In this document: positions 233 through 61,085 of the stretch, one piece after another
Layout of the letters: each line of letters starts with the position of its first letter
How positions within the stretch are numbered: the first letter of the stretch is position 1
Source of the DNA: Orbicella franksi
Lineage: Eukaryota
Assembly (NCBI GenBank): GCA_964199315.1
Contig: OZ116701.1
Location: forward strand, 8,370,001 to 8,434,000
Length of the DNA: 64,000 nt
Reading direction: 5' to 3'
Position numbers and translations under genes: made by a program
The notes under the pieces: generated by a model
What the model was told of the DNA's origin: nothing
Database searches by the model: none
The model's input: only the letters and a program-made list of their open reading frames with translations

Positions 233-3200
233 ACACCATTTCAGCGACAATCCAGAATATTTCCAAGGAAATAAACAATCCAACCATAGTCGATCGCTCG
301 GTTAAATACGAAAAAGTGGCTATAGTCAAGAGCCCTCCTGACGACCTTATCGTCTTGGACACAAAGTTTGAATGGCGTGTAAAACACGCGGAAGACTTTG
401 ATGGAGACGAAACCGTAGTGGCACAAGGAACAACTTGGTGGAATATTAACAGACGATCGATTCCCGCTGGTCTTTACCTAGTCTATTTCAATGCTTCCTA
501 CGAAGTGGAGACAAGTGGAAGCTCTGACACTGAAGTACTGGAGGCATCTGACTATGGTTTTATTAAGGTCATCAAAGCTCCATTGTTTGCTGTTATTTAT
601 GGTGGCACTACTGTTCGCTGGGGTTCGCAAGTTAGGGCCTCTGTCAACGGCTCGTTCAGCTACGATGGCGATATAGGTCCTGGAAGTAATAGTGGACTTC
701 AGTTCAGTTGGTCTTGCCGTCGATCCGATGTAACAGACCTTTCAAGCGACTGTTACAGTTCTTTCACTGATGGAGCTAATAGTGCCGTGGTTACAATTAA
801 CGCCGCTAGACTTCAAGTTAAAGTGACATACGTGTTGAGATTAACTGTCTCTGCTGATGATAGGAGCTCTTTTACACAGATGAATATTGAGGTTGAAAGC
901 GGAGATTTACCTCTCGTGTTTCTTAGGTAAGTTTGGACTTACATCCTTACAGAGAGCAACTGCGTCCGCAGTATGAGTGGCAATCAAAAGCCTACTGTCC
1001 TCCGACAAAAAAAAGTAAGGAAAAAGTAACAAACGTCTTTCTGGTCTTAGATTAAATAAAATAAAAACAAAAGTAAAATTAGAATAAAGCAATGCTTACA
1101 ATGTTTTTGATTCTTCAAATACTCAACTGAAAGCTTTTAATTTAACACGGGAGACAAAAACACGCCAAGTTATTAATTTGTTTCAATCTGTTATACATGT
1201 AGCTTGAGTTATTTTAACTCTCGAACGTACAATGTAAGGGTGGGGGTGAATGGATGTTTTATTCTAAGATGATTGGCTCTAGGCCAAGGAAAATAAAGAA
1301 AGAATGAATGAATTGAATAATAATACAAATTTACAGATATATCGAGTGCGTAGACTCGAAGGATAACGATAAATGATATTTTTTGATAATTGTATCATCA
1401 GTTACCCTCCAAATTCAGTTACCGTTGTTTTATTTCAGGTGCCTTGTAGATTGTGGCCCAATAGTATCTTCTTCTTACACGTTGCGAGTATCCTCGCATT
1501 GTCTCAACTCTCCCTGCGAAGGCGCAAAGTATGTTTGGAGCTTGGAAACATTAAATGACAACATATGGGAAAATGTTCCCAACTTGGCTAACATGACAGC
1601 AACAACAGCAAACACGTTAAGTATGGTTATTAAACCGAATTATCTCCAATCTGACACAAAATATCGCTTACGACTCCAGGTCACATCTTCGCTTAGAACT
1701 GAAGGTCTCTCTGTGCTCGAGTTTAAGACCGCTGACGCGCCGTATGGGGGGCACTGTGAGTCATCTGTCTCTGAAAGGGTGTCTCTAGAGACCGAATTTA
1801 CTTTCGACTGCATTGGATGGCAAGATGAAACTGGACCGCTAACCTACGAGTTTCGTCTGAATAACCAACAAATATCATATGGTGTGTCAAGTAAGTCCGC
1901 ATCAACAGTATTACCTGAAGGAATACCCGAAGATGATTACAAGATTTCAGTCAACATAGTTGTAAAGAATGCTCTCGATGTGTCCGTGGTACAGACATTG
2001 TCAGTGAAGGTAGGAAATAAGGCGTGCCTGCGCAAGTGAATGCTAAATGTGTATCACCAACGCCCCATTATTCTTGGCCCCATTGGAAAAGTTTGAAGCA
2101 CTTTGAGTCTGTATTCTTCATTAAACGACGAACCTCGGATCTGCTGAGCTAGGAATATCCATGTTTCTGCAAATTATATTAACTTCGTATGGCTGAAAAC
2201 CTCCCGCACCGAGGTGACTAAGGTTCCTCTCGGTAAAATAACCTAACGTTTGTTCAGTGAGCGCCATGCGTCGCCGATTATGTTTTACACTTCAGCTTTA
2301 AGATAGACATGGCAATACTACCAGCTAACTAACCACAATACGAGAAAGAAAACTATTTCGAGCATTGACCACATGTGCCAAAAGGTGGAGTAATTCTCAT
2401 TTGAGGGATCGGAAATTTGTCCACAAGTACTTTCAGGTTCTCATAGTCGCTTTGCACAGCACTATGTTAAAAAAAAAGCAACAACAACAACAACAACAAC
2501 CCTTATAAGGGGTATGACCGTATTTACAGAGTCGCATGCATGAAAAGCGCTTTAAATTCAATCAAAGAAGGTGCTTATGTACTCTTTTCCATGTTTAAAG
2601 GTTAGACCAGCTCAGCCGGATTCTTGCAAAGCGACAGAAGACGACAGTGCAGACAGCCTAGTACTGGGAAATTACAGCATTTTGAGTGGTTATTTGAGGA
2701 AGCTTAACTTCAGCCGCGCATCACCACTGGCTTTATCAGTCCTTAAGGCTACCCGAGAGGAGACCACTTGTGGTGAAATGTTGAGCGTGCGATCAAAAAC
2801 CAAGGCAAGACGCCTTTAGTGAGGGTCCCCAATAAGGTTCTTCAATCCCGCCATCCCAACCAGAATTTTCCCTCCATCCTGTAATCCCTACGGATTCTAT
2901 CGGCTCGTCCCGATCTCGATTAGTTTTCCTTAGAGATCCCTTACCTCGTCGGAAGAGTCTCTCATAGCAAACCCACTAAGTGGATTTCCGACATGCACTA
3001 AGATGACAGCTTGATTTTCTTTGTTCATTTTCTTCTCCGGACCCCCAGTGTCGAATGTCACTTATTGCAAGTCACATTTCTCCATTCCCGCTTTGTAAAA
3101 TTGCGAAATCTCACAATGTCAGTCCCAAATAGCGTCTCCTTCAAAATCCCGAATTGCGACCTTCAATGCCGAATCCCGAAAAACGTATAGAGGATCCTCT

Positions 3201-6200
3201 TTCGTGTATGTGAAAATCTATTAATTATTGCAGCGGTACACATGTACAGACATAAAGATTTAATAAAATAGACCATGAAGGAGCGAGAGAGAGGCAAAGT
3301 TGGGGAGCTATGATAAGATTTAAGAGATCTCAGTCTTTGTTTAAACACGATGAAATTCCATTTAGATTTACAATGTTGAAACACTCTGACTAACTAGCTA
3401 ACGAACAAACGGTTACCACTATAATTATTATAAAATAAAATATAATAAAAGAAATGATTAAAATACAAAGAACCTGCTTTTCAAGATCCCTTGTGAATTT
3501 GATTAAAAACTGTTGCGGCAAAACTGTGTGTTCAGTTTTGTTTTGAAATCTTTAATTAAGGATGGTAAGAAAGTTCTTAATAGAAGAAACAGAAAAGAAA
3601 TACAAATAGCAATGGAAAAGAAAAAAAAGAGTGCCATGTTTGACTATGGGACAATTAGCAAAGAGTAGCGACGGTGAACATAAAACGCGGAAATTAAAGT
3701 GAGAAGTTCAACTACTGCCGCCTTGAATTAGTTGACCAAATTAAATGTAACAAATTGTTTCAGGGTTTGGACTTGTTTAACCGACTTTTGAAATTTCAGG
3801 TTGTTACTAAAATAATTGAGATGTTCACAGCCATAATTCCAGTAAACGTTCCCATGTCAAGGTCGCTCATGTCTGTAGTTTCCGAGGCAATTGAAGAAAA
3901 GGATGTAATATGTAACAGCTGCAATTCTTTGGTAAGCGAATACTTTAAGGAAAAATAAACACACAATATTTCTAGTGTATTTAGTGCGAAAGCCTTAGAA
4001 AATAACCAAGTATCGGTTACAAATAGGAGCTTGAATGGGCACACAAACAAAAAAAATAAATAAATAAAGTACAGTTAAAGATTCAAATGAAATAAGCTTG
4101 AAATTAAAATAAAGGAAAAGAAGGACCTCGTTGCTAATTGTATTTTTTCTTAGAAACTATTGTGTTTTTAAATCCTTACGTGTGTTTCATGAAATTGCGC
4201 TTGTTGTCTCTCCCTTGTTACCTTCATCTTCGTTGTGTTATCACATTTCTTTGGGCTGACTCTTCTTCATTTGTTAACACTTATTACTTCACAAGCGTTT
4301 ACAGTATCCACTCTTTGTATCGCTAGATTCCAGTAAATATTATACATGTCTCTAATTAATAACAAAAGACTGCGTTTCTAGTTGAAAACTATTTAACAAA
4401 ATTTATTCTTTCATTTTGTTTAAGAATCAGACACTACAACTGACCGAGAGAGTCTTGGCTCTTCTTGTTGCTGCACTCGCAGATTTGGAGAAGCCGTTTA
4501 GTAAAGACATGCAAGAAACGGCCGAAAGCGTCTCACGATGTCTTGTGAACATCATGGAGGCGACATCGATTGGTAGTGGTGGAGAGAACAAATCGGATGA
4601 TAGTAACTCTATTTTCAAAGTACGACAACAGTAGAGAATCTGACTTCCCAAAGACACTCTCTAGCGACTGACTGACCGACTGACTGAAAAGGTTGTAAGA
4701 ACAATACGAAAATCAATCATTCGCAACTTCAACCTAATTGAGAACAATAAGGAAACGCGAATTTGCTGTTGTCGACTATTAGCTTAGGAAAATACAAGTT
4801 TCATTGAACAATTAGCGAGTGCGAAAATTCTATTCAGCTGGTTTCGTATAGACATAGTTAATTATGGCATAGAGTAACTCGGAGTATTTATTTTTTCTCA
4901 ATCTAGGAAACCGTCCAGAAGGCAATGCAACAGTTGGATTCACTCATTCATGCTTTTTCCAAACGGCTCTTACCATACGAGAGATTAATTATGAATGCAC
5001 CTAGTTTAAAAATGATTATGCGAAGTGTCAACGTTAATGAACTTCCAGGGCTCAACATGGTGGAAAGTGGTGCACGGTTCAAATTACCAGACAATTTTGA
5101 AATGCCCGGTCTAACTGGAAACATCGTGGCAAAGGTAATTTTATTTCCTTGCCATTTAAAGCTCTTTGCTTATCTTTCCNNNNNNNNNNNNNNNNNNNNN
5201 NNNNNNNNNNNNNNNNNNNNNNNNNNNNNNNNNNNNNNNNNNNNNNNNNNNNNNNNNNNNNNNNNNNNNNNNNNNNNNNNNNNNNNNNNNNNNNNNNNNN
5301 NNNNNNNNNNNNNNNNNNNNNNNNNNNNNNNNNNNNNNNNNNNNNNNNNNNNNNNNNNNNNNNNNNNNNNNNNNNTAGAGGAATTAGGTTATTTTCGTAC
5401 TCAGTTATTTTCAAAATAAATGCAACGTTGCCACAAACGTATAAAATACGCAAAAGGATACCTTCCTTTTTTTTCTCCCGCTTCTTAGCGGTCCGGAATT
5501 CTAAATCCTTACATGCGATTGGCTAATCGCGCGCGCTCCAGCGGTCCGGATTTTCCCATCTGGACCCCGAGTATGGACCGCCCGAAATCTCCAACTTTGG
5601 AAACTTTTCAAGCTTGTTGTTACACGGTAAAACAACATAACATGTAAACATTCAATACAGAGTCAGACAATCATGGATTCTGAGCACACATTATCGCTTT
5701 TAGTGCACGAAATGTCAAACGCACGGGCGCGTACGCCAGATTTGAACTGAAGGGCGTTAACTGGATCATTTTCTTTATAGATGATGATCTTTGAAGTCAA
5801 TCCATATGCCTATGACCCCAGTAGTGAGTTAATAGAATCAAGTGTGTGTAGTTTTGAACTGAAACTTGAGGGTAAAGAGACGCTGAACGTGACTAATCTC
5901 ACTGAAGACATTGTTATCACAATTCCAATAATTTCAAACAGCTCCGACCAAAATACAAGCAGTGGTACATTTCTTCAACCCCACAAGATGACGATACGAT
6001 CGTTTTACGCGGAGAAGGTGGGAGTCCCAGTTACTCTTACAATAGAAGAACAGAGGGACACTGCTGTAATTGAAGTGTTTGTTAGATTTGGATCTAAACC
6101 ATCGCCGAGGGAATTTGATAGAAATTACACGATATTTCTCGACCCGTCATGTACAGACAGTTTAGAAAGCAAACGCAACGACGATGACTGTCAGCCTGAA

Positions 6201-30919: not shown

Positions 30920-30951
<32 letters not shown>

Positions 30952-43665: not shown

Positions 43666-46600
43666 GTAATTTTGTCATCAGATACCCTACTTTGCTTTAC
43701 TGTGGAACTTTGCTTCATTACGCATCTTTCTTAGCTATATCTTTTTGCAATGCTTTCATCATGGTAATATCGATATTATATTGAGTCGTCGAGGCTGATT
43801 TCCCATTCATATACCGTCACTGTCGCCATCATAAGTAAGCAAGCCTTTTGTCATGGTCGATGCCATTTCTAAGCTCTAAAGTCGGCCTGAACTAGGTCGA
43901 AACTGTATTGTGATTTGTAATACAAGGTCGTGTCAAGAGAACGATTGCGCAAAGGAAACGTTATCCGTCAGTTTCATTCGGCGCCAAAACTTGTGATAGA
44001 TCTGACAGAAAAATATATTTTGTTATATCGTGTAGTAATGTAATTGTTTGTTTGTTTGTTTTTTGCTTGTGTTTTTCTTATATGTTTAGTATTCGCTTAT
44101 CTTTTCGAAATCTAATGAAGCAAAACTGTTTCCATGTGCAGATGAAAATGACGCATGTTCAGCCAGCGATGGTTCAGCGGAATGCACATGTTCAGCAGGC
44201 TATTCAGGCATTCCATGCAAAGGTTAGTGTTAATACTTAATCATGAGTTCAGGATTATGGATCTGCGTAAATTACTCCTCTATCACATAGAAGGGGTAAT
44301 GACAGACATTTAAACGCTGAGCATTCAATCGCCAAAACATAAAAGTGCAATGCAGGATGCACTTAACCCTTTGCTCACCTGGGACTTCCTTTGAAATTTT
44401 TAACTTACGATTTGCCTTTACGATCTTGCAATGGAATCTTGTTTGCGCAAAGATACCTTTTCGAATCTTTATCGTCATCGAAATCGTTGCTGGTGACGAT
44501 TTTGAATTTCATAAACACTTATGTGTTTTCGGTGGCACTTTACCTATAGTTCATTCTGTATGCCGTCTTCTCTCGTTTCGATACTGCCTCAATTATGCGA
44601 TAAGATTTCCTACACAACAGTTCCGCTGAACGTTTCTCCTACTTTATATATTCGTTATTTCTTAGAGGTATCCTTCAGCTAACTCGGAAGCTGTCTAAAT
44701 TACATTTGCGTGCTCATAAATTATAGTTGCAGCTTCACTCACTAAAGTCGCAGTTGCAATTGCTGACTTCAATTTTTACTATCATGTTTTAGGCTCGTGA
44801 TATGTTACTGCTTTTATCTGCAGATACTGACGAATGCACAACCAATGCTCACAACTGTCATTCATCGGCGACTTGCAGTAACACCATTGGTTCTTTCAAT
44901 TGCGCTTGCAACAAGGGATACACCGGCGACGGCATTTCTTGTAGTGGTGAGCAGTTTCTTGTTAACGTTATAGCTCAAGAAAACAAACTTCGTGGAAGCT
45001 TTGTTTTGTTTTGATTTTTGTTTTGTTTTTGTTTTTGTTGTTGTTGTTGTTGTTGTTGTTTTGTAGTTATTTACTGTTTTTAAAGAAATAGAAAACATTT
45101 TCCGAGTTTCTATAGAGTTTGAGTATAAGCTTACTAGCATTCTATGCCGTTCTCTCATTGGCTACGTTACTCACCATCTATTCTTTTGTGGATGACGTCA
45201 AAATGTAGTGAGAACAAAAAAAGTGGCGCACAAGTCGTAGGCGAGTGTGTCACTGGTGTTCTTACCACATTTTGACGTGTTCTAAGATATGTTACTGAGC
45301 AGACGCAAGGCAACATGAAATCTACATGTATCTGTGTTAAAAAATAAAGAAACCAAAATGTTAATGATGTTCTCTTTACTTTGGTCCTCCAATATATCAT
45401 GAGTAAGAGCAATCAAAATGCGAGAATAATCTAACTTGTTATCTAATTTATTATAGACGTTGATGAATGCACGACCCACGCTCACAACTGTCACTCAGAT
45501 GCGACCTGTACCAACACAGAAGGCGCGTTCACTTGCAGTTGCAAAGATGGGCACACTGGAAATGGTCGACAATGTGTAGGTATGTGTTTCCACGTACATC
45601 CTCATAGACTAGTTTAGAAGAAAAGCTTCGCTAACTTAAAAACCTAATATATAACTCATGAAGCAGTCTGGCAGTTAGATGGCTGTGCTAAGCAATACAT
45701 TCTGGAATATTTGTGACTTCATATTATATCATAACGTAACTTTTTATTTGTTATATTTTAATATCTTCCTTTTTGGTAGATGTCGACGAATGCAGACCTA
45801 ATGGAACTCACAACTGTGATATGAACTCCGAATGCGTGAATACCATTGGTTCATTCAACTGTACATGTCATCAAGGATATTCAGGAGACGGCTTTACATG
45901 TCATGGTATGGTTATTCAACGAAGAAACAAATATGTTTGAACTATTTGATATTTACCGCATACTATTATTGTCTGGGAAACGCGTTGGTGAGATGGTTAG
46001 CGACCTAGAGTCCAAATTGAGCGGCCAGGGTTGGATCCCTGGACAAGATCACTGCGTTGTGTTCTTTGAAAAGTGCTACAGTGCCTCTCCCCACCCAAGT
46101 GTATAAATGAGTACCAGTGAATTTTGATGCTGAGGAACGTAACCCTACGATAAGCAAGAGTTCCTTCAAAGAGGGATAGAAATATTACGTGTTGCAAAAT
46201 AAAAAAAAATGCGACAAAGCATATTTCACCAGGTACAGTTGCCATGCCAACATTACTTTATTTGATCAATCACATCATACCAAAATATTTCCAAATACAT
46301 TTAGGAAAAGTGGCCAAATTCGGACATTATTAAGTTGGTGGGGCCCTCAAAAGCCTCTCCCTCACCCGAACCCTCCCTCGGAGAATGAATAGTATTAAGA
46401 CCTCTAATCATTGCCATTCTACTAAAGCTGGATCTGTCACACTGAGAAAATGGAATAAGGTACTACAGTGTTTAATGGAGTACGGGGTAAGAAGTGAGAG
46501 CCATACACATTAGCCGTCATGGCAATCTCAAAAGAGGTCTTACGTCAAATTTTGAGAGCTAAGTTCAGTCTTTGTTATTTTCATTGTCGTAGTTATTGTT

Positions 46601-49600: not shown

Positions 49601-52600
49601 GGTACATGAAGGTGTAAACATAATCTCTGACTTCCTGCATAAGGTTTGTGGTGATTCTGCTTCTTGCAGCATTGGTGAAATAATTCCCTTCCAAGAGCTG
49701 TGCGATGTACGGCCCATCTCTTCTAAATAACGACGTGGCAACATCCTCAACTTTAATACACTCTTCCGGGATGGCCGTTCTAGGAGGGTACACAAGGCAT
49801 TGTGGAAGATCATTTCCTAGCGGGTTTCCAACACAGATTCCATAAACTCGTTGGACGTTGTTTTCAGTCCGCTTCCTCTTTCTTTCATTTGACTTTCCGC
49901 GGTTTTCTTTTTTCCTTCTCCTTTTAAATAAATAAATAAATAAATATACATTTATATAGCGCCATTTTCCACTAATTGTCCATGGCGCTTTACAATACTT
50001 TAAAATTAAAATCCTAATTCTTTAAAAACCTAAAATCCTAAATCCTAAAAGTTAAAATCCTAAGAATTAAATACGCTATATAATACAATTAGGCTACAGA
50101 TAAAAAGTAAAAACTACAAATCAAATGCACGCTTAAAAAGATAAGTCTTAAGATTAGCCTTAAAAACTGCCTCTGATGATGAAAGTCTGATCTGGAGGGG
50201 TAGTTTATTCCAGAGCCTTGGTGCCGCCACGGAAAAAGCCCTTTCACCATACGTTTTAAGATTTGCTCTAGGCTCATCAAGCAACCTGTTGTTTGAAGAT
50301 CGTAGTGTCCGACCAGAAATGTTAAATCGCAGTAGGTCTCTAATGTAATCAGGGGCCAGTCCATTCAGAGCTTTGTTGATGTGCTGTTTGAGTATGCCCT
50401 TGAATATGCTGTTATCATTGCTCTTCTTATTTTCTAGTGCTTCCATGTCCTGCGTGACCTTCGTCAACTTAGCTTCTATACATTTGATCTGTTTTACATT
50501 AAAACTGTGGGCAAATTCTTCGCCCTGCCTTAAAGCAAGCCCATTGAACTGAAAGAGTGTGGAATCATGTTCCTTTACATCTTTCAATATGACATTCAAC
50601 TTTTCCATTATTGCTCTGTGCTCTTTGATGGAGAAGTTCAGCTTTCTTCCATCACTGGGCTTCAACTGATACCCTGGCATGGAAAACTCACTCGCCCTTT
50701 CCGAACAGCTATCCGCACTTAGAAAGATTGCTTCTTTTGCTTGTAAGATGTCAAACAGCCTGGATCGTTCAGCTGTAAACCTTTTCTTAAACGACTCGTC
50801 GCTTTCGCCATTATTGCGCATTTTGGAATTTTGCGCATTTGAAAAGCAGCAAGAGTGAGAAAGTAAAGGCAATTGTAAGACATTCATGCTTGCAGCAGAA
50901 GAGTCCTCTCAGAGCTGGCCAACCAACACTGAGACATGCCAGGACATTGACACAAAATGACAACAGGGCAAGTGCTGACAGCAGTGAAACGGATGAAAGT
51001 GACAATGATGAGTATGACAGTGATGCCATTGACTCTGGGGGAGAAGATGACTCAAGTGACGTCATTCTTGCATTCATCAATTCAGACGAGGAAGATGCCA
51101 ATGAGAGGCCAAATGCCACACGCTCAGGGCGAACCATAACTAGGAGATCCGAAATTGACTTCTCTGTCTTTTGATTTGTTTTTAAAACAACAGCTCTCTG
51201 TAGTATAGGGATTGTAAATGTTGTCTTCATAGTGAGCACAATAACGTGAAGTAGGGGGATAATAGAGAAATATTAAAAAAGTTGAAATTTAAATACTGTT
51301 TGTTCAATTTTTTTTTTGGGGGGGGGGTCATCCCAAAAAATGACCGCTATAAGGGGGGGGGCCATATGAAAAAATTGGTAAGCTGAGGGGGGTCATGCGA
51401 TTTTTAAATGGTGCATCCCAAATCCCACCAGCCCCCCCTCCCTCATAAAAAATGAACGGTCCCTTAACTCGCGTGATTCCAGATCGAGCGGTCTGGCTTG
51501 GAGCCCGGCCAAGGTCATTGCGTTGTGTTCTTGAGAAAGACACTTTTCTCTCAAAGTGCTCTTTTCAACCTAGGTGTAGAATTAATTACCACTGGATACC
51601 GACGAATGTGATGCCTGAGGTAACCCTGCGATTAATCATTGCATCTCATCTAGTAGGAAATAGAAATACTCCTAGAGGTTTCTTGTCATGAAAACTGAAG
51701 TGGTAAAACCTCCGGCGCTACGGACTACTTCCCCCGACGCAGGCTCTAGCTTACTTTTATCTAATGTGAACATGAAGAATTTCATAACAAAACTTACTCA
51801 AGTGGAAAGAACGAAGAAACACTCTCAGCGTTTCTTTGGCGAGACATTCGAGACTGCATGCCAATCAACGGTTACTAAATGTAACCAAATCATGGCTCCA
51901 TTTGATTTTATACAGGTAAAACCGTCCTCCAAATTGGATCCTTGCCTTTCACAGATAGCAGAAGTTGCAAGAAAGTTACAAAATTTTGTGATCGGGAAAG
52001 GCAATCGGCTGGATGAATATCTAAAGAGGGGTAACATCAGCCAAGCTGCAACACTAGCTCGATCGGTCCTAAAGTCGTCTAACGAGAAAACAGATTGTGG
52101 AAGAACACTGGACAACGATACAAAAACACTGGTACGTGCAATGATATCAGAAACAAAACTTTGACTTGATAACAGGAAAACTCATAATTCACACTTGGTA
52201 TTAAAAATTAGACCTTTACTTAAACAAAAAGTGAGCAACATGATTCAAATATTCATATTTTCATCGTAACAGACATATGAATTTCTCTAAAATCTTCTTT
52301 TTATATTTTCTTGGATAGATTTCGAACACATTGGTGGAGAAGTTCACTTCTATAACACCCACAGGCCTTCAAATGTCTCGAACGATCATGGCGGTGGTCA
52401 ACTTAGCAACTAGAAACCAACAAAATCAGAGCTGTGATAGCTGTAAGAATGCAATGGTGAGAATAATGGCAAGGACACTGGGAATAGCAATGGGTTAACA
52501 AACAATGAAACTAACAAAAGAAAGCAAAATAGATGTAAATAACAAACGGCATATACAGCTGGAAATCAGTTTTGTTGAAAAAAAAAAAAAAAAACTTTTA

Positions 52601-55600
52601 CTTAACGGTAATATAGTAATAGTAATAACTTATTTAATGTCGAAAATGTCGAAGTGTTTGCACAATCTTCCGAGCCAGAGGTTCATGTTAAAAACACTCT
52701 ACAACAAATAAATAGGATCTAAGAACTGATTACAAAAATGAGGTATTAAAACGCTGGAAAAAGACTTTAAATACTAATCCTTAACAGAGATTTTCAAGCA
52801 GGAGTTGCAAGTGCACCCTTTAAATTCCGCTATATCGCTAAAGCATTAACGAAAACGTGCAACGGTCTCACATTAATATTGTTTAACATAGTTCGGCACA
52901 GCGAATTTATATTAATGATTACTTTTTCCCACTAGAATTTAACATTGCAACTTACAGATAGCGCAACAAATTTACTGGTGTCAGCCCTTAACGACATGGA
53001 GGAACCTTTTTCTAGTGAGCTAGAGGAATCAGCTGCAAGTGTCACAGGGTGTCTCAATAATGTTCTTCAGTCGGCAGCAGGTGCAAGTCAAGCTAATGGC
53101 GACTCTTTGGAAAATCAGTCATCCTCAAAGGTAGAACGTCATAATCCAATTAACCGTAAAAGAAAAAGATGATTTGGTTTTCTTGGATCAGAAAATTGTA
53201 GGCATTCAATTGTTCAGCGTGTGGTTTCGCTATTTTTTCCAGTTAAGGTGGCTATCTGCAGTTTTTCCGAGGCTCAGTGGCGCATGCTACGATTGCCCTC
53301 CTAACGTCAGAATTAGTCGCACGTGCAAAAATGACGCAAGTAACCCCAAGAAAAAGCAAAAACCTCTTCAGATCTTAAAACGCGTTAAATCACTTTGGTA
53401 TACGTAGTGCAAACTGCTTTCAAACATTTAAGCCTAGGTACAATAAATTTGACAGAAAACGTTCGCTAAACAACCGGTAAAAGAGTTCTAATTCACTCTT
53501 GCTTTCTCGCATGGCGTCACATGAGCGCGCACAAAATAAAAGGCACGCGCAGTTCAATTCTCGTCCAAGAAAGAAAAAATTCGGAACGGGCAATCATAAA
53601 AAAGTCCAAATTTTGGCTTATGCGCATGCACCAAATTAAAATATTGTACATTCTCGTAGCTTATCGGGAAATTTATCTTTTTGGTCAAAAAAAAGGTTTT
53701 CAGCCAAACTACGGCCCGTTTAGCGTCATGGTAGCCTTAAGTTAAAAACGGCCTTTTTTGTGAAATTTTCGGTTTTAAAGGGTTAACTGCTGTACACCAA
53801 ACTCTTATAAAATAAACACCTCGGGTCCCTGTTAGTATATATCTTCACGAGTACAGATCAAACATAGAGCTTGATTTTCAAGTAATATATAAACATTCTC
53901 TTTCCGGACACATAACATCATATACCGAATGGTTGAACCTGGAACCTCTGTCACCCAGACGATCACATTATATAGCAATTGTGTCTTAAAAAACATTTTC
54001 CTAGAAATTATTGTCTTTAAATCGATACCTCGATCGTGCCAAAACAGAAATCAAGGCGATTCAACTTCTAAACTCTCTTTCTGTTCACAGTAACGTAGTT
54101 GAGAGATTGTTGAAACACATTTTACGGGGTGGAGACCACTTTAAATGGCAGCGTTGACTGCTTTCCTGTCAAACTGTCCCTCATTGAGCAAGTGGCTCTG
54201 ATCATGATGCACAGGTTTCCTTTAATTTCGCAAATCATAATAAGACACTGTACAGACAAAACTAATGTCTGCATAAAAACCAGTTTGTATCACGCTACTG
54301 GTTTTAGGGATGTGATCATTTCAACTGGCATATACCATCTTTCCGTAGCTATGCTGATGTGCCCACATTGCGTATATGTTACCCAGGAACGGTTTGAGTA
54401 TGTCCACAGACGTTAATTTGTCCTCCCCAGCCCCACCACCTTACGTTTTGGCTATGCTGATGTGCCCACATTGTATATTGCGTATCCGGCCACGCGCAGG
54501 GTTAATATTTTATGCTAGTCTGTGGACAGATCAAAACGGTGTCTCCGACTGTTTTTGGGTGGGTATTATCGACTTTTTTTCTCTGTTATTATTGTAGGAA
54601 AATGTGCAGAAAGCTTCAGAAAAACTGGACGCCATGAACCATGCATTTTTTGCCCGCCTGGTTCCGTCTGAAGTTCTTGTCATCAAAACACCGGAGTTGG
54701 CAGTCGCGTTAAAGAAGGTCTCCAGTGACTATATCAATGGACTCAACATGGAAGAAGGAACGTCAAGATTTAAGCTGCCAGGCAACCTAGGGCAAATGAG
54801 TGGCGGTAATATTAATGCAAAGGTGAGATGTTAAGGAACTTAGTCTGACTCCTAATGAAAAAACATAAAAGGCATTATTTTGTAACCCGTTTTCACATGG
54901 AACGGTACGGTACTACATGTTATGTATCATATACAGTATCGCATGTTGCATGGTTATGTCATGTTGTATGGCATCGTGTTGAATCGTACCATGCAATGTC
55001 AAGTGGCATTGCGCCGCATCGTACCTTTTCCTAACGTATTTTATAGTACCGTATTTCATATCCTCTCAATGAAGCGCAAAAGCCATAGAAAATTAATTGG
55101 ACCGAGATCTGAACAAAAAGATACCAATAAGGTAGCAAAAAGAAAAAGCCATAAAGCTACAACACTTAAGGCTCTTTCATTGATGTCCACTGTTCTGTGC
55201 TCAGCTTTACTTCAGCAACACAAATAGTACAATAAAAGACGTAATATTTCTCCAAATTCTGAAGTTATCTGCAGGCATATAAAACATAACCTTCCATGTC
55301 TTTTCAGATGAGAGCTATTCATTTCAATCCGTTCACCTGGGACAATAGCAGCAAGAAGGTCAAATCAAGTGTGACCAGCCTGGATCTTCAAAGCGTCAAT
55401 GGGACAAAGATAAACGTGACTAACCTTGATAATTACATTGAGATAGTCATTCCGCTTTCGAGGCGTCCAACAAACACCAGCAATGGAACTGAACATTATT
55501 TTTTGAAGCCTAACAGAATGTCCATCCGTAGTTATTACGCAGAATTAGCAGATGTCCCCGTTGCTATTAGAATCGGTGTGCAGGCAGAAGGTACAGTTAT

Positions 55601-58600
55601 TAAATTGTTTGTTAAATTTGGATCAAGACCTACGATCGAAGATTCTGATCACAACTTTACTATTCTGTTCACGTCAACATGTAGAAATCTTTCAGATTAT
55701 CAGCAAAGCAAATCAACATCCTGTCCTCTTGAAGAACGTTCTGTCACAATAGTACCTTCTGAGCCAAGTCTCCTTTACGCCGGTCTGTTGTTTCGAGAAG
55801 CTAACAACGCCACCGAGCATGCTAGGAAAAGACGGTCATGTTTCGGTCATGGTCGTGAAAGACGTTCATGCGTTGGTGTCAAGGATCCACCTCCTAAAGG
55901 AATCACGAAATTAGATGTTCCACGGTATGATCCATTGACAGATGTCAACTACACCTTCAGTATTACCCAATCAAGTTGTCTGTATTGGTCTGAAGACAAA
56001 GAAAAGTGGACCTCCGATGGTTGCAAGGTAAATTATTATACTGTTTCTATTTAATGGTCATCTCATGAATCTTTCTTAGTCTCCTAAGCTACTCTGTGGC
56101 CCGAAAATTATAATAGACCTATTTATAGGAGTATGTCCTGTGACTTTCTCAACCAAAATAAGTTGCACTGAGACCAAATTGATTAGGAAAATGAAAAAAA
56201 AAAAAGCAACAAAAACAGCATGGTGTTACAAGTTTACTAATTTTACGCGGTTCTTGATATTACCATGTAATTTTTTTTTTCGTGATTACAAGTTTGTATT
56301 TTTGTGCTCACACTTTGAATATCGTTTAGTGTCATATTATATTACATCACTATTAACAGGAAGCTATCTCATCCTGTAATGTAATCTATCCCCATCCCTT
56401 ATTATGAGATGATTTCTAAAGTTTTGAAATCGCATGCTTGGGTTGAAACTGAAACGTACGAGCAAATAACCTCCGCCCTAGATTATCAGGCGGTAAATAA
56501 TTTTGGGAGATAATAGCCTCGAACACGCACGGTAACTGTATCATTATATCGTAAGTCTTGCTGCTGATAATGATTGCGTTTCTCGTAGGTTGCATCCAGC
56601 TCAAACACAACTCATCTTAAATGCTTGTGCAATCATTTGACTTCCTTTGGTGGAAACTTCATTCAGGCCCCGAATCCTATTGACTTTGACAAGGTTTTCC
56701 TTGAGTTTACGAGGCTTGGTGAAAGTGGCAATATTTCAGTACTTGTGACAGTTGCAAGTGGTTTCCTTTTTTATTTTGTTGTACTAATATTCGCGAGAAG
56801 GGCGGACAAGAGGGATAAAAATAAGGTTTGTATAGCCTTAACGGTGATATTATTTTTTTCCTACCCGGGGAAAAGTTCTCATTCAGTACACATGTACCTT
56901 TTTCGGGCACAGAATTTCTTAATTTTTTAAGCCTTAAAGGCAGCCTGGCCTAATCACATATATAATCGTCAAAAGAGGACGTGTGGAAACAAGAATGGCA
57001 CGATCGCGACGACCCGGTTAAACCCTGCCGAGAATAGCTACTTACTGCAAATAAGCACACAAAGGATTAACTAGGTAACAAATTTTTCATATTTGTTGTA
57101 GATTTGCCCTCCAAGGAGAGTAAGTGTTGTCCAAGAAGGTACTTACTTCTACGACATGGTTATAAGCACAGGCGTCTGGAAAAATTCAGGAACAACGGCC
57201 AACGTTACAATCAGCATTGAGGGCGAAATGGATGAGCTAAAACTGATTCCACTTCGAAGTAAATGGGAAACAAGTGAAATATTTGCTCGGGGAAGTATCG
57301 ATGGATTTGTCTTAGTTACAAACAGATCTCTGGGAAGTTTAACGCAAATAGGTTTGGAACATGACAACTCAGGTGATAACCCTTCTTGGTTTGTAGAGAC
57401 AGTAGTAATAAGAGACAGGCAGACTGAGGAAAGGTGGGTGTTCCCTTTAAATCGATGGCTTGCGTTGGAAAAAGATGATGGGGAAATAGAAGTTACCGTG
57501 GGCAGTGAGGGTGCTTCATCCTTTCCAGATCAGGTACGTTCCCGTTTTGGAAGAAAAATCGCCGACAGTCACCTGTGGATGTCAGTGTTTGGTAAAGCAT
57601 GCTGCAGTACTTTCACTCGAGTACAGAGAGCTTCGTGTTGTCTCACAGTTCTATTTAGTGCCATGATTGCTAATGCTATGTTTTATAACATTGGTGGCGA
57701 ATCAGAAGGAGCTATACAAGTTGGACCCTTCAAGTTTTCTTGGAGACAGGTTGTCGTTGGAGTGCAAAGTGGACTTATAACTGCACCAGTAAACATCTTG
57801 ATTGCTTTCCTATTTAAGTCTAGTGGACCCAGAAGAAGAAAGGGAGGCAAATACAAAGAATATTACCAGGCGCAACAACTTGTAGATGAAATGAGGGATA
57901 CCGGTTGCATATTGCCTCATCTCTGTGTACTCATCGCTTGGTTTCTATGCTTCAGTACAACTCTAACAGCTGCAGCGTTCACTGTATTTTATAGCTTAAT
58001 GTGGGGCAAAGAAGTTGCTGAGCAATGGCTTGCTTCCATTTTGATCTCATCATGTCAGGACATTTTTGTTGTACAACCAACAAAGGTTTTGTTAGCTGTT
58101 GTTATAGTTTCATTGCTCATGATCAGAAACAAAGACAACAATGAAGATTCACATGCGAAAATTGATGGAGTTTATAGATACGAGAGTGACATTGATTTTC
58201 TCAGTGATGATCCTAAAGCACGCTTTAAACGAGATAAGCTGGAAACGATACGTAAGCGAAGAAAAAAGGAGGCCCAATTGGCAGTAGTGATGAGAGACAT
58301 TGTTTTTCATTTAACATTTGTATTTTTCCTAGCAATCGTGTGTTACGGAAACAAGAATGACAATCGTTTCCTGATGACAAGGACATTGATAGATCCATTC
58401 ACGAATTTTGACCTGGTAGGCACTGATACGGTACAAATGTGATATATCAAGATGTTAATCATATAGTATTTTTGAGGCAACAGGTCAACCCTATTCAGAA
58501 CATCCGTGGGGTTTCGTTTCTATATTTTCAGATGTAGGTTCCTTTTGTAGAATAGGTTCCTTTTCATTGTTTGTGATTTATTTCGAGTCCGCCTTTTCAT

Positions 58601-61085
58601 TTTAAAGAAAGTTGTTGTTGTTTCCGGATGTGTTGGAAAATAAAGAAACCCAAGGCGCGATAACGGATCCTGAGCGGCGGTCATTCTCAAATCATTGGGT
58701 AAAGTTGGAGAACTATAGGAAACGTTTTTGGATGTATTATATACCCTTTGAGGGTACATTACAAAGGATCTTAAAGGAAAATGCAAAAAAGCTGTTCTGA
58801 ACAGGGCTACTAAAGAACTACAAACTGTAGTGGTCTCGCGACAAATCAAAAAAGGGAAAGTACATCAAATTGTTTTTTTGCAAAAAGCACCTGAAAGCAT
58901 GTAAGCAAAGAAAACATATACGTTTACACATCAACAATAACTCCAGTCTTATTTTCATCAATTTTAGGTAACTGACTCAAACAGTTTGTGGGGATGGTTA
59001 AGACAAGAGTTCCTGCCCAATATTTACAGCCGCGAGTGGTATAATGGATTTAACGATAATAAAGACGTGTATACCGCCAACGAGAATTCCATACTGATCG
59101 GCATGCCTTCGATGCGACAGTTGAGAATCAAAAGGAGTAAGGAGTATTTCAAAATGAATCTTTAAAACCACGCCAACTCTTAACTGAGTTAAAAACTCAA
59201 GTAATGATTGTCTTTTCCCAATTTCAACCATAATTACGACGGCAAACAATGAGCTGAGAACCCTTAAAAAATAAATTAAAAAGGTTTGAAACTGTGGGCC
59301 GAAGTCTACCAACCACAGACTACAGAAATGGCCTTGTAAACCCACTCAAGTGAGCTTTGCCTAAGAGGTGAGCTGAGATGATCGATTTCAGCGGAAATCG
59401 AAGTCGTTGGCTGAAATTCAAATTAGGAGTTTGGAGCTGAGTTTATGTCATTCGTTTTAACTCTATGCATGATCCGTTTTAACAGTGAGTGCACTGAAGG
59501 GGTAAATGGGAATTATAAATGGGATTTGCCTATTCACTTATTAAACAAGTACTACCAGATGTTGAGTTATAACAATCTACTAATACATATTTCTTATAAA
59601 CGTTCTTGTAAAGGATCCTGTCAATCAGGACCTAAAGTTATCGCAGACTGCTACTATGGATATTCCAGTAAAGACGAGGACACCACCTTGCTAAGTCTTC
59701 CGGGTTGGAAGCCAATTCCCCAAAATACTTCATGGCCTAAATCTCTACTAATGTGCCCGAAACCGTGGCGTTATCAAACAGCCGAGGAATTAAACAATGG
59801 CCCAATAAAGGCCACTTACAACATATACGGAGGGGGTGGTTACGTTGTTATCATGGGTTACAAGGAAGACACTGCTCTTGGTGTATTAAGCGAGACCCTG
59901 GGCCATGGATGGGTTGATCGACGGACCAGAGCGGTTATTCTAGAATTTGCCGTGTTTAACGTGAATACAAACTTGATCAGCATAGCAACTTATTTTTACG
60001 AAGCCTTCTCTACTGGTGTTGCCTATACAGCAACCAAGGTTGATACTCTTGAGTTGTACAGCACAGAGTCCGGAGCTCTGATGTTCTATCTCATTTGTCA
60101 GTTCCTGTTTATTGCCATGGTACTTTTTAACTTAATCGCGATGGTAATCCGCCTGCGCCGACAACGCCTTATATTTTTTAAGTCTGTCTGGAATATGGTT
60201 GATCTCTTCATGGTTGTATCATCATTAACGTCAGTGGCGTTTTACATGATTAGATCAAAGAGTGTTTTGAAGACCATCAACGCCATCCAGGCCAATCCCT
60301 ATGAAATTATACATTTCCACTCAGCATTAGACTGGGCAAGCTGGGAAAATGCCTCAATCGCCGTCGCCATATTTACTGTGACACTGAAGCTTTTGAATCT
60401 TATCCGTTTTAACCCTTATGTAATTTACTTGTTTTCCTCTTTCCGTCAGTCCGTAGGCTACCAACTCTCTTTTGTAGTTTCCTTCTTTATCATATTTAAT
60501 GCATTTGTTATCACAGGAATGCAGTTTTTCGGCAGAACCGTCTACGTGTACTCTAGTTTCTTGCAAGCAGTCATTTCCCAGTTTGAATTCCTGTTAGGAA
60601 GAGCTGTTCCTCTCGATGACCTTCGTAACGAAAATCGATTTATTGGACCTGCATTCGCCTTCATGTACATGTTATTTATGACTATAGTACTTTTGAATAT
60701 GTTGGTTTCTGTTCTGAATGAGTCGTACACTGACGCCAAGACACACGCAGAGGAATGTGCGGAAGAGCTTGAAATGGCACGATTCATTGGTGAACGATTC
60801 ATGGACATTTTCCAAGGAAGAAAAACGCGAGCTGAGTGCAAGCTATTTTGTGACGACACGACGTTTGTTAACATGTGCAGTTCTGATGCAGAACCGTTTT
60901 GTCTAAATTCCCAAACTATCTTTCAAAGCACGGAAGAAAGATTGGAAAAATTGGAGAAAAGGCTATCTGTTCTTGCCCGACGCACAGAAAACGTGGATAT
61001 TGATCATTTAAAGGAAGAAGCTGAGTTTATTTACATCCTTAGCTTTATTATGAACTCCTCAAAGAGCGAGACAACTCATCTCTAA
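42126..61085 (+). CDS. Gene C: polycystin-1-like protein with 2 D8C + truncated EGF + 4 EGF-Ca ectodomain (first coding exon uncertain)
   Basis: Exons: 42126-42497 (D8C), 43279-43665 (D8C), 44142-44222, 44824-44946, 45457-45579, 45780-45905, 46783-46911, 47271-47973, 48386-48962, 51916-52131, 52319-52456, 52936-53130, 54598-54822, 55308-56027, 56589-56825, 57102-58415, 58968-59136, 59614-61085. Total 7307 nt, plus 1 nt from a phase-1 upstream exon, which is in frame to the TAA at 61083-61085. GPS is [11 protein letters not shown]. Confidence 0.92.
44142..46911 (+). CDS. Gene C EGF exons (one 4-Cys truncated unit plus four EGF-Ca)
   Basis: Phase 1-1 exons of 81, 123, 123, 126 and 129 nt. The last ([18 protein letters not shown]...CEPL) closely matches the last EGF of gene B ([18 protein letters not shown]...CEPL). 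Confidence 0.88.
45001..45063. repeat. T-rich / (TTG)n microsatellite
   Basis: Direct reading. Confidence 0.85.
45975..46195 (+). mobile_element. tRNA-derived SINE copy (degenerate)
   Basis: TTGGTGAGATGGTTAG (A-box-like), GGTTGGATCCC (B-box-like), TTGTGTTCTTTG...ACAGTGCCTCTCCCCACCCAAGTGTATAAATGAGTACC; same family as 32851-33143. Confidence 0.7.
49476..50821 (-). pseudogene. Transposon-borne orphan ORF (about 298 aa reconstructed) interrupted by the LINE
   Basis: 50821-50372 (150 codons, MRNNGES...KQHINK) joins in frame to 49922-49476 ([18 protein letters not shown]...[14 protein letters not shown]) if the LINE and an AAA duplication are removed. Confidence 0.6.
49926..50371 (-). mobile_element. 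5'-truncated L2/CR1-group LINE 3' end nested in the DNA transposon
   Basis: Encodes [14 protein letters not shown]...RTLRSS...[24 protein letters not shown]...FK..LKTYLF, a typical L2/CR1-group ORF2 C-terminus. The 3' UTR contains TGTAAAGCGCC...GGCGCTATATAAAT and an (ATTT)5 tail. Confidence 0.85.
50839..51174 (+). pseudogene. Acidic C-terminal remnant of a second transposon gene
   Basis: No ATG start. Asp/Glu/Ser-rich tract followed by [18 protein letters not shown]. It lies inside the TIR element, on the opposite strand from the orphan ORF. Confidence 0.4.
54348..54473. repeat. 23-bp direct repeat pair
   Basis: GCTATGCTGATGTGCCCACATTG at 54348-54370 and 54451-54473. Confidence 0.85.
54895..55030. 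repeat. Low-complexity degenerate pentamer tract (TGTTA/CATGT/GTATC-like)
   Basis: Direct reading; it produces the spurious ORF 54922-55227. Confidence 0.5.

What the first reader, a model, noticed from the sequence alone, without database searches (positions are those of the whole stretch)
233..61085. Cluster of three polycystin-1-like channel subunits whose ectodomain begins with a uromodulin/OIT3-type D8C + EGF-Ca module of variable copy number
Seen: B = D8C-EGF9-REJ-GAIN-TM-PLAT-TM-TOP-channel and C = D8C2-(half EGF)-EGF4-REJ-same core. Homologous exon lengths from REJ onward (A/B/C) are 694/706/703, 571/574/577, 204/210/216, 132/138/138, 195/180/195, 228/225/225, 714/717/720, 237/237/237, 1323/1308/1314, 169/169/169 and 1439/1490/1472. 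Established: vertebrate PKD1-family N-termini use LRR, WSC, C-type lectin, SUEL or PKD repeats, while D8C occurs in secreted or GPI-anchored ZP proteins (UMOD, GP2, OIT3); OIT3 is D8C-EGF3-ZP. Inference: an OIT3-like head has been shuffled onto a polycystin in place of the ZP module. A conserved channel core with diversified heads looks like a sensory or recognition receptor family, for example for microbes, mucus or mechanical/chemical cues.
Basis: partly seen in the sequence, partly recalled or inferred. Interest (0 to 1): 0.82.

Follow-up and report, generated by a model that had tools for sequence, protein, structure and literature searches.

The report
Coral polycystin-1-like genes with D8C heads
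This stretch of a stony-coral genome holds three neighbouring genes for polycystin-1-type membrane proteins, and at least two of them very probably carry, at the tip of a stalk of calcium-binding EGF units, a uromodulin/GP2-type "D8C" domain that has not been reported on a polycystin; it is one more variant in a large coral family whose outer tips are swapped, not a new kind of system.

Summary
All 33 core exon lengths given for A, B and C exist as GT-AG-bounded chains in an open frame. Pfam finds D8C_UMOD, EGF_CA, REJ, GPS, PLAT, Polycystin_dom and PKD_channel where stated. The N gap (5180-5375) lies in an intron of gene A and hides no homologous exon.

Gene B gives a complete 22-exon, 2503-residue model: a newly found signal-peptide exon, D8C, 9 cbEGF, REJ, a GPS site (HL|T), 11 TM segments with PLAT, and a channel domain. 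Gene C has D8C x2, a truncated EGF and 4 cbEGF, but its first exon was not found. Gene A's head lies outside the window.

No transcript of B or C across the last-EGF-to-REJ junction was seen. Evidence that head and core are one gene:
- every head exon and the REJ exon are in phase 1;
- the REJ exon has no start codon;
- the arrangement is conserved in three related loci, with dN/dS of 0.13-0.41;
- one intron-free contig of a 63%-identical relative joins cbEGFs directly to REJ.

A Desmophyllum pertusum relative has pentraxin/LamG and 3 cbEGF on the same core. So only the D8C cap is new, not an "OIT3 head replacing ZP". This is a new variant of a known kind. Its function is unknown; a PKD2-partnered receptor subunit is the likely role.

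The parts
233..11342 (+). Gene A. Core only: REJ to stop, 11 exons, 1967 residues visible. The head lies upstream of the window.
Evidence: 51-53% identical to B and C.
5180..5375 (.). Assembly gap inside intron 6 of gene A, between exons 4907-5134 and 5781-6494.
   Evidence: the donor is 45 nt before the gap, and the protein is colinear with B and C across the junction.
36021..36060 (-). Gene B exon 1: ATG plus signal peptide MPVFWFIVLGIVS, donor G|GTATGT (phase 1).
   Evidence: Found. ATG, length, phase and donor are conserved in L010 and L008 (alignment A1). It is the only match in the window.
33884..34276 (-). Gene B D8C (D10C) exon, phase 1-1, 10 conserved Cys.
   Evidence: Pfam D8C_UMOD 74.8 bits. 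GP2 7p6r E=5.7e-25, UMOD E=5.8e-25. The acceptor ctgcag| is conserved in L010, where the nearby ATG is followed by TAA.
26318..33355 (-). Gene B stalk: nine cbEGF exons, each phase 1-1. Coordinates: 33355-33230, 31861-31739, 31214-31089, 29814-29692, 28679-28554, 28017-27895, 27306-27184, 26929-26807, 26449-26318.
   Evidence: EGF4 and EGF6 are 87% identical in DNA.
14008..25535 (-). Gene B core. REJ exons: 25535-24830 and 24707-24134. Exons without a Pfam match: 24036-23827, 23320-23183, 22301-22122, 21246-21022, 20524-19808. GPS plus TM1: 19150-18914. PLAT plus TM2-6: 18437-17130. TOP start: 16712-16544. TOP, channel and stop: 15497-14008.
42126..42497 (+). Gene C first D8C exon (phase-1 acceptor tttttttatgcag|). 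The exon upstream of it was not found.
43294..43656 (+). Gene C second D8C exon. It is 44% identical to the first and 67% to the second D8C of L008.
44121..44222 (+). Gene C truncated EGF-like exon (5 Cys).
   Evidence: Weak EGF_3/EGF_CA hits below the gathering score; sequence.
44824..46911 (+). Gene C stalk: four cbEGF exons at 44824-44946, 45457-45579, 45780-45905 and 46783-46911.
   Evidence: The splice 45579|45780 was seen in an RNA contig of run X3.
47271..61085 (+). Gene C core, 11 exons: 47271-47973, 48386-48962, 51916-52131, 52319-52456, 52936-53130, 54598-54822, 55308-56027, 56589-56825, 57102-58415, 58968-59136, 59614-61085.

Best explanation
A, B and C are diverged paralogs (51-55% identical) of a coral family of polycystin-1-like (PKD1L-type) membrane proteins.

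Build of each protein. A signal peptide is followed by an N-terminal cap: one D8C/D10C domain in B, two in C. Next comes a rod of calcium-binding EGF units, each encoded by its own phase 1-1 exon (9 in B, 4 plus a truncated one in C). Then follow a REJ domain, a GPS autoproteolysis site (HL|T), TM1, a cytoplasmic PLAT domain, five more TM segments, a TOP/polycystin domain and a TRP-like six-TM channel domain.

Origin of the variation. The head varies because symmetrical exons are easily duplicated, lost or inserted. The core, including the last cbEGF, is the conserved chassis.

Likely mode of action (inferred, not shown). The protein is the single PKD1-type subunit of a 1:3 complex with a PKD2-like channel. 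Its pore loop has Lys/Arg (LGK/LGR) where PKD2-type subunits have the cation-coordinating Asp (LGD), as PKD1L3 contributes a Lys to its filter. The D8C cap, held out on the stiff cbEGF stalk, would be the ligand- or surface-contacting part, and the GPS/REJ region would couple it to the channel. What it binds is unknown.
For: Shown:
- Intact open frames of 1967, 2503 and 2433 codons across GT-AG exon chains.
- Domain matches.
- The D8C is homologous to solved GP2/UMOD decoy modules at E about 6e-25, with all ten Cys.
- The channel exon matches PKD2L1 (1.6e-42), PKD2 (4e-35) and PKD1L3 (9e-33), but PKD1 only weakly (3e-5).
- The GPS motif CLCNHLT-FGG is conserved in A, B and C, and hydropathy fits 11 TM segments.
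- The filter reads LGK/LGR against LGD. PKD1L3 contributes Lys2069 to a 'KDDD' filter in a 1:3 complex (PMC8357825).

One gene rather than two:
- The phase-1 chain runs from exon 1 to the REJ exon.
- The REJ exons lack a start codon, and no start-capable exon lies in the last head intron.
- The signal-peptide exon upstream of D8C is conserved.
- D8C-EGFn-REJ colinearity is seen in the ortholog L010 and the paralog L008/L013.
- A cbEGF exon lies 200-800 nt upstream of the REJ exon in L001, L002 and L004, the last only 36% identical.
- Between B and L010, dN/dS is 0.39 (D8C), 0.13-0.41 (EGFs) and 0.21 (REJ), at dS about 0.2.
- The splice 45579|45780 between two C EGF exons was seen in RNA.
- L014 carries four cbEGFs and the REJ exon in one frame without introns. 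Its 99.4%-identical genomic counterpart L015 has a 3' splice site exactly at the switch point.
Against: - No read or contig of B or C crosses the last-EGF|REJ junction or a D8C|EGF junction. The four RNA runs laid on C show low depth that covers introns as much as exons, and one contig runs unspliced through the donor at 46911.
- The first exon of C was not found.
- L014 is imperfect. Its first 150 nt are out of frame, its 3' end departs from L015 in mid-exon, its own cap is unknown, and that its sample is a metatranscriptome is my inference.
- Among the 150 best representatives hit by the REJ exon, no long protein has a D8C, so no annotated full-length model confirms the architecture.
- Cnidarian 'uromodulin-like' D8C+EGF proteins of 326-362 residues exist as clusters. 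These could be separate secreted genes.
- Partnership with a PKD2-like subunit, GPS cleavage and any ligand are untested.
Confidence: 0.8

Rival explanations
1. Two genes at each locus. A secreted 'uromodulin-like' D8C-EGFn protein lies upstream of an independent polycystin-1-like gene that starts at or just before the REJ exon. The apparent fusion would come from adjacency alone.
For: The Atlas shows cnidarian clusters named 'uromodulin-like' or 'EGF-like domain-containing' with D8C+EGF only, 167-362 residues long. No junction-spanning RNA was seen for B or C, and one contig reads through the donor at 46911. GenBank models in Desmophyllum pertusum annotate the REJ exon as its own small gene.
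Against: The REJ exons begin at a phase-1 acceptor and have no Met or signal peptide. No start-capable exon lies in the 359-nt (C) or 782-nt (B) interval. No head exon ends in a stop. L014 joins cbEGF to REJ without an intron. A cbEGF exon directly upstream of REJ exon 1 is kept in relatives down to 36% identity. The D. pertusum models are single-exon fragments of an obviously larger colinear gene. Split polycystin-1-like models have a precedent in Nematostella, where RT-PCR joined two of them (PMC8846589).
Confidence: 0.08
2. One gene with alternative products. The D8C and/or some EGF exons are optional, through cassette exons, alternative promoters or intron retention that gives a secreted D8C-EGF form. 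The D8C-headed full-length receptor would then be only one isoform, perhaps a minor one.
For: All head exons are symmetrical (phase 1-1), so any of them can be skipped without breaking the frame. Reading through the last EGF donor gives a stop after about 12 codons. RNA contigs retain introns.
Against: There is no positive evidence for exon skipping. Every head exon is under purifying selection between B and L010, but this does not exclude optional use.
Confidence: 0.1
3. Some copies are decaying. This applies particularly to C, which has no identifiable first exon and a truncated 5-Cys EGF. On this reading the cluster is partly non-functional birth-and-death debris.
For: The first exon of C was not found despite several searches. 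C has a truncated EGF, a transposon in one intron (note s1-236760) and very low RNA depth. An earlier unchecked note reports broken polycystin copies 330 kb away.
Against: C keeps an open frame of 2433 codons with intact splice sites, GPS, PLAT and channel motifs. One of its splices is seen in RNA. A short or divergent first exon is easily missed.
Confidence: 0.1

Closest known systems
Vertebrate PKD1-like proteins PKD1L3, PKD1L2 and PKDREJ (polycystin-1 family, 11 TM)
   Same: REJ domain, GPS motif, TM1-PLAT, and TOP plus a TRP-like six-TM domain. The channel exon matches PKD1L3 (7d7e_A) at 9e-33. A basic residue sits in the pore loop where PKD2-type subunits have Asp.
   Different: The head is D8C plus cbEGF instead of C-type lectin, LRR, WSC or PKD repeats. 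No PKD repeat was detected. The basic residue follows the filter Gly directly (LGK/R), which is not the same position as PKD1L3 Lys2069. No partner or current has been tested.
Sea urchin REJ proteins (suREJ1, suREJ3) and EGF-headed PKD1-like proteins found here (P0080, P0033)
   Same: EGF modules are combined with REJ/GPS (and a channel in suREJ3 and P0080). This shows that EGF-REJ combinations are an existing theme (suREJ3 as cited in PMC4890752; the suREJ1 domain content is from my own knowledge).
   Different: They are only about 25% identical to B. They have no D8C and carry other accompanying modules (Ig, PKD repeat, C-type lectin).
UMOD / GP2 / OIT3 decoy module (beta-hairpin plus D10C, formerly D8C)
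   Same: Clear homology at E about 6e-25, with ten conserved Cys and the WYRF, HP and NCG-FYVYKL motifs. The order D8C then EGF is as in GP2 and OIT3 (PMC8930769).
   Different: No ZP module, so no polymerising filament. The domain is anchored through a polycystin core instead. The UMOD N275 sequon is absent in all three copies. A sequon near the GP2 N65 position exists only in the second D8C of C (NIT).
Known cnidarian polycystin-1-like proteins (Nematostella hair-cell polycystin 1; Acropora digitifera REJ skeletal-matrix protein)
   Same: Cnidarian 11-TM proteins with REJ, GPS and PLAT. In the Nematostella case the gene models were split and the gene was shown to be single by RT-PCR (PMC8846589; PMC4890752).
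   Different: Those proteins have WSC and PKD-repeat heads. Neither D8C nor a cbEGF stalk is reported for them.
Desmophyllum pertusum relative (GCA_029204205.1, MU827791.1; locus L016)
   Same: REJ exon 1 is 69% identical to B and the last cbEGF 72% identical. The core exons are colinear.
   Different: The head is LamG/pentraxin plus three cbEGF, with a discoidin-like ORF further upstream. There is no D8C within 10 kb.

Membership tests
Polycystin-1-like (PKD1 family, 11-TM) | REJ domain in the ectodomain | tested here: met
   PF02010 scores 94-110 bits on the first two core exons of B and C.
Polycystin-1-like (PKD1 family, 11-TM) | GPS motif with an HL|T cleavage site just before TM1 | tested here: met
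   C-x2-W...W-x4-C...C-x-C-N-H-L-T-x-F-G-G is conserved in A, B and C. The Pfam GPS match is weak because it is split by an intron. Cleavage itself cannot be tested here.
Polycystin-1-like (PKD1 family, 11-TM) | PLAT domain in the first cytoplasmic loop | tested here: met
   PF01477 scores 53-55 bits at the start of the 1308/1314-nt exon, directly after TM1.
Polycystin-1-like (PKD1 family, 11-TM) | Eleven transmembrane segments, the last six TRP-like, with a TOP/polycystin domain | tested here: met
   Polycystin_dom scores 78-80 bits and PKD_channel 101-113 bits. Hydropathy peaks fit TM1-6 and S2, S4, S5, S6, with S3 below threshold. The channel exon matches solved PKD2L1, PKD2 and PKD1L3.
Polycystin-1-like (PKD1 family, 11-TM) | Assembly 1:3 with a PKD2-type subunit | not testable with these tools
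   Only indirect evidence: the filter Asp is replaced by Lys/Arg, compared with PKD1L3 Lys2069.
Polycystin-1 proper (PKD1 orthologs) | LRR-WSC-PKD repeat-C-type lectin-LDLa head, and a PKD1-type last-six-TM region | tested here: not met
   None of these domains was found in the heads. The channel exon matches PKD1 only at 3e-5, against 1e-33 to 1e-42 for PKD1L3 and PKD2-type chains.
D8C / D10C (UMOD-GP2-OIT3 decoy module) | Sequence match above the curated threshold, and homology to solved structures | tested here: met
   PF23283 scores 54.5-74.8 bits (cut-off 27). GP2 7p6r E=5.7e-25, UMOD 6tqk E=5.8e-25.
D8C / D10C (UMOD-GP2-OIT3 decoy module) | Conserved cysteine framework (ten Cys) | tested here: met
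   Ten Cys columns are invariant or nearly so across B, C1, C2 and relatives (alignment A2).
D8C / D10C (UMOD-GP2-OIT3 decoy module) | N-glycan sequon in the hairpin/D10C groove (UMOD N275 or GP2 N65), which presents high-mannose glycan to FimH | tested here: not met
   B has KLV and no sequon at the UMOD NLT position, nor after Cys1. C1 has none. C2 has NIT one residue off the GP2 site. [quoted passage not shown]
UMOD/GP2/OIT3 protein family (ZP-module proteins) | C-terminal ZP polymerisation module | tested here: not met
   No Zona_pellucida match on any exon scanned. REJ follows the EGFs directly.
Calcium-binding EGF (cbEGF) | D-x-D/N-E-C start, six Cys, Asn/Asp and aromatic consensus | tested here: met
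   All nine B units and four C units start D[IVL][DN]EC and have six Cys. On the EGF exons scanned, EGF_CA scores up to 49.8 bits against a cut-off of 27. The extra C exon at 44121-44222 has only 5 Cys and scores below threshold.

The most novel reading that the evidence does not exclude
Stony corals hold a large, fast-turning-over repertoire of PKD1L-type receptor subunits: dozens of genes per genome, in tandem arrays. On this reading, interchangeable recognition caps (D8C x1-3, pentraxin/LamG, discoidin) sit on cbEGF stalks of adjustable length, all wired to the same GPS-PLAT-channel core. This would be an ion-channel-coupled recognition system for microbes, mucus or other surface cues, diversified by exon shuffling much as immune receptor families are.
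Probability: 0.2. Interest if true: 0.8.

Novelty: new variant of a known kind. Interest (0 to 1): 0.5.

Why it matters
Polycystin-1-type proteins are thought to be receptors, but their ligands are mostly unknown. The D8C/D10C module is the part of uromodulin and GP2 that engages bacteria. Finding it at the tip of a polycystin gives a concrete, expressible ectodomain to test for binding, for example to bacteria, glycans or mucus.

The family also shows how symmetrical exons let a conserved channel-linked core acquire new outer domains and change stalk length, even between close species (9 versus 7 EGFs).

For coral biology it marks a candidate family for surface sensing. For genome annotation it flags genes that pipelines tend to split into fragments.

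Tried and rejected
1. ATG at 34304 as the start of B (it gave a 2499-residue model). Rejected: in the ortholog L010 the same ATG is followed by TAA, while the acceptor ctgcag| is conserved. The real first exon is 36060-36021.

2. First exon of C. I scanned for phase-1 ATG exons, searched with a degenerate pattern of the B-type exon 1 and ran blastn of the B-C intergenic region against relatives. Only weak candidates turned up (37507-37618). Unresolved.

3. RNA evidence. The single read-laying run on 41500-47499 gave one splice (45579|45780), but otherwise low, intron-covering depth. The EGF4|REJ junction was not covered.

4. Full-length annotated relatives. The representative search with the REJ exon returned mostly single-exon ORFs. 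The nearest long proteins are about 25% identical and lack D8C.

5. D8C-to-EGF spliced ORFs. The D8C search and the JGI scan with alignment A2 found genomic orthologs (L017, L018, L020) and transcripts of other D8C families (EGF-D8C-D8C), but no D8C-EGF-REJ transcript.

6. Literature. 'D8C' plus 'polycystin' gave three unrelated papers. Searches on cnidarian PKD1-like expansion gave nothing on this architecture. The library is incomplete, so this is not proof of novelty.

7. Glycan-decoy idea. The UMOD/GP2 sequons are not conserved.

8. Rfam on the window found no match.

9. Structure prediction was not run. The sequence homology to solved GP2/UMOD and polycystin chains was already decisive.
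Full report
WHAT IS THERE

The window comes from a stony coral. RNA runs that hold it are labelled coral metagenome, and the nearest named relatives are coral and sea-anemone proteins. It holds three large genes: A on the + strand (233-11342), B on the - strand (36060-14008) and C on the + strand (42126-61085). A and B lie tail to tail. B and C lie head to head.

CHECK OF THE OBSERVATION

A gave a single chain. B gave two and C gave eight, differing only in short exons. Similarity among the paralogs picked one chain each. So all 33 lengths are real.

- REJ on core exons 1-2.
- GPS across exons 7 and 8.
- PLAT at the start of the ~1310-nt exon.
- Polycystin_dom on the 169-nt exon and the last exon.
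- PKD_channel on the last exon.

Upstream of B's REJ exon, on the same strand, lie one D8C exon and nine cbEGF exons. Upstream of C's lie two D8C exons, a truncated 5-Cys EGF-like exon and four cbEGF exons.

THE GAP

The gap at 5180-5375 starts 45 nt after the donor of A exon 6 and ends 405 nt before exon 7. The A protein aligns with B and C across that junction without a missing residue. It is therefore an intronic gap. Its content is unknown and I did not try to fill it.

GENE B IN FULL

The ATG at 34304, just upstream of the D8C, is not the start. In the ortholog L010 it is followed by TAA, while the acceptor ...ctgcag| 28 nt downstream is conserved.

A short exon at 36060-36021 (ATG, MPVFWFIVLGIVS, donor G|GTATGT, phase 1) lies in a block of similarity shared with L010 and with the more distant L008/L009. 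Its ATG, its length, its hydrophobic character, its phase and its donor are kept.

With this exon, B is a 22-exon gene, all GT-AG, of 7512 nt and 2503 residues with no internal stop. Its parts in order are: signal peptide, D8C (ten Cys), nine cbEGF, REJ, about 480 residues without a Pfam match, GPS (CLCNHL|TAFGG, residues 1446-1456, HLT at 1451-1453), TM1, PLAT, TM2-6, TOP, S2-S6.

Every intron from exon 1 to the REJ exon is phase 1, so every head exon is symmetrical.

GENE C AND GENE A

C gives an open model of 2433 residues from its first D8C exon. I could not find its first exon.

A begins in the window at its REJ exon, so its head cannot be judged.

ARE HEAD AND CORE ONE GENE?

Direct evidence for B or C is missing. 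The one read-laying run showed low depth over exons and introns alike. It showed one clean splice, 45579|45780 (GT..AG on the + strand), between C's second and third cbEGF exons, exactly at the predicted borders. It showed nothing across 46911|47271.

The indirect evidence is strong:
1. The REJ exons start at a phase-1 acceptor and have no early Met or signal peptide.
2. The intervals between the last EGF exon and the REJ exon are 359 nt (C) and 782 nt (B), and contain no start-capable exon.
3. No head exon ends in a stop.
4. Relatives keep the arrangement:
   - L001 (63% identical REJ exon), L002 (56%) and L004 (36%) each have a cbEGF exon 200-800 nt upstream of REJ exon 1.
   - L010, the ortholog of B in a related coral (non-coding DNA 73-86% identical), has exon 1, D8C, seven cbEGF exons and REJ.
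   - L008/L013 has exon 1, D8C, D8C, EGF, D8C, a long EGF array, and then REJ and the core.
   - L017, L018 and L020 repeat D8C-intron-EGF.
5. Between B and L010, dS is about 0.2. dN/dS is 0.39 for D8C, 0.13-0.41 for the EGF exons and 0.21 for REJ exon 1. The head exons are therefore selected coding sequence.
6. L014, a 1083-nt contig of JGI sample 3300008033, carries four cbEGF units and about 105 codons of a REJ exon in one frame without any intron. The junction is ...CEAIG|EFLVVISGISKDKYNAT, where B has ...CEPLG|[17 protein letters not shown]. Its 99.4%-identical genomic counterpart L015 has ttctttttcaatag| exactly at that point and no EGF within 1.7 kb upstream. That is a spliced EGF-REJ message in a family member.

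Caveats on L014: the first 150 nt are out of frame, and it departs from L015 at nt 972. That its sample is a metatranscriptome is inferred from the intron-free state of this and other contigs of the same series.

WHAT KIND OF POLYCYSTIN

The last exon matches PKD2L1 (1.6e-42), PKD2 (about 4e-35) and PKD1L3 (9e-33), but PKD1 only at 3e-5. With REJ, GPS and PLAT, this makes it a PKD1L-type protein, not a PKD1 ortholog and not a PKD2.

In the pore loop A and B read LLGK and C reads LLGR, where PKD2L1 has ILGD. In the solved PKD1L3/PKD2L1 complex (1:3), the filter is 'KDDD', with a Lys from the PKD1L3 subunit (PMC8357825). By analogy I infer that these coral proteins are the odd subunit of a heteromeric channel with a PKD2-like partner. 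That inference is untested.

THE HEAD

B's D8C aligns with the solved GP2 and UMOD decoy modules at E about 6e-25. All ten cysteines of the 'D10C' fold are conserved (PMC8930769). The glycan sequons that make UMOD (N275) and GP2 (N65) decoys for bacterial FimH are not conserved; only C's second D8C has a nearby NIT. A simple 'glycan decoy' reading is therefore not supported.

The EGF units all carry the calcium-binding consensus. They should form a stiff rod whose length differs between genes (9, 4+1) and even between orthologs (9 in B, 7 in L010). The array grows in two-exon steps:
- B's EGF4 and EGF6 are 87% identical in DNA.
- The 126-nt and 123-nt exon types alternate over B's first six units.
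- L008 shows three or more fresh copies of such a pair.

HOW THE HEAD AROSE

The data point elsewhere.

The last cbEGF is a distinct, conserved type ([18 protein letters not shown]...). It accompanies the REJ exon in every relative examined that has enough upstream sequence. This includes Desmophyllum pertusum (L016), where REJ exon 1 is 69% and the last EGF 72% identical to B. There, three cbEGFs are preceded by a LamG/pentraxin exon and, further upstream, a discoidin-like ORF, with no D8C in 10 kb.

More distant PKD1-like proteins also have EGF heads (P0080: EGF-Ig-EGF-REJ-...-channel; P0033). Others carry PKD repeats or C-type plus SUEL lectins.

So the cbEGF-REJ chassis is older, and D8C exons were added at its tip.

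D8C is itself a mobile module in cnidarians:
- Stand-alone 'GP2-like' or 'OIT3-like' proteins of 184-214 residues occur in Pocillopora, Montipora and Nematostella.
- D8C-EGF clusters exist.
- Triple-D8C and MAM-adjacent loci exist.
- EGF-D8C-D8C transcripts exist.

FAMILY SIZE

A search seeded with L014 returned more than 80 distinct REJ-exon-1 clusters at 57-75% identity. Up to four or five sit on a single long contig of coral assemblies. L008 and L010 each show another paralog's channel exon a few kb upstream of exon 1. The window's trio is thus part of a large tandem family.

Earlier unchecked notes of this scan report other polycystin-1-like genes in this genome with discoidin, SEA or lectin heads. 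One of them, 325 kb away, has a UMOD-type Cys domain. I did not test those notes.

NOVELTY

I found no paper or annotated protein that combines D8C with REJ or PKD_channel. My searches cannot query architecture databases, however, and the protein collections hold few coral gene models.

Variable heads on PKD1-family cores are a known theme. I therefore rate this a new variant of a known kind and of moderate interest. Its value is mainly as a testable ectodomain and as a clear case of exon-shuffling on a channel-linked receptor.

Noticed in passing
window 45100-45300 (intron between C's first and second cbEGF exons): RNA contig depth of 231-828 in all four runs, against about 2-10 on neighbouring exons. 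Many loose ends lead to unrelated sequence. The stretch contains an inverted pair, TGACGTCAAAATG / CATTTTGACGTG. It is probably a dispersed, transcribed repeat. There is no Rfam match.
   Followed up: partly
window 41900-42099 (just upstream of C's first D8C exon): RNA depth of 51-160 in all four runs, far above the gene's exons. No ORF with a signal peptide is present. The stretch contains TGACGAGGTCACGTGA. It could be a repeat, or a 5' exon or promoter-proximal transcript of C. Unresolved.
   Followed up: partly
window 49476-51239 (intron 2 of gene C): Several ORFs of 105-257 residues on the minus strand lie inside the 2.95-kb intron. This fits the transposon noted by another first-stage finding (note s1-236760).
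   Followed up: no
window 30853-31000 (-), downstream of B's third EGF exon: Intronic reading frame of tandem [10 protein letters not shown] repeats (a microsatellite-like hexapeptide repeat). It gave a weak 'PT repeat' hit and is not coding in the model.
   Followed up: no
L008/L013 (ENA ERZ25067872, ctg20970): A relative with three D8C exons: one B-like (70%) and two C2-like (67%). It also has three or more fresh copies of a two-EGF-exon unit before REJ. D8C copy number therefore ranges from 1 to 3 in this family.
   Followed up: partly
L016 (Desmophyllum pertusum MU827791.1) 171-572 and 4875-5568: A discoidin-like ORF and a LamG/pentraxin exon lie upstream of three cbEGF exons and a REJ exon that is 69% identical to B. 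GenBank annotates the REJ exon as its own 246-residue 'hypothetical protein' and the LamG/pentraxin exon as a separate 230-residue product, so the gene is fragmented in that annotation.
   Followed up: partly
L014 nt 1-150 and 972-1083: The intron-free EGF-REJ contig is out of frame at its 5' end. This may be repeat-induced misassembly at a GGTTCTTTC 'GSF' word. It also leaves the genomic REJ exon in mid-exon at its 3' end, ending in a stop after FWGR. That could be a chimera or an alternative 3' end.
   Followed up: partly
window 14008-61085 versus L008 and L010: Gene order differs between relatives. In the window B is inverted (tail to tail with A, head to head with C). In L008 and L010 the upstream paralog is on the same strand as the D8C-headed gene. 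The cluster has therefore been rearranged.
   Followed up: no
L011 and L012 (ENA coral assemblies): D8C exons also occur as a triple array without REJ within 10 kb, and next to a MAM-domain exon. D8C has been shuffled widely in corals.
   Followed up: no
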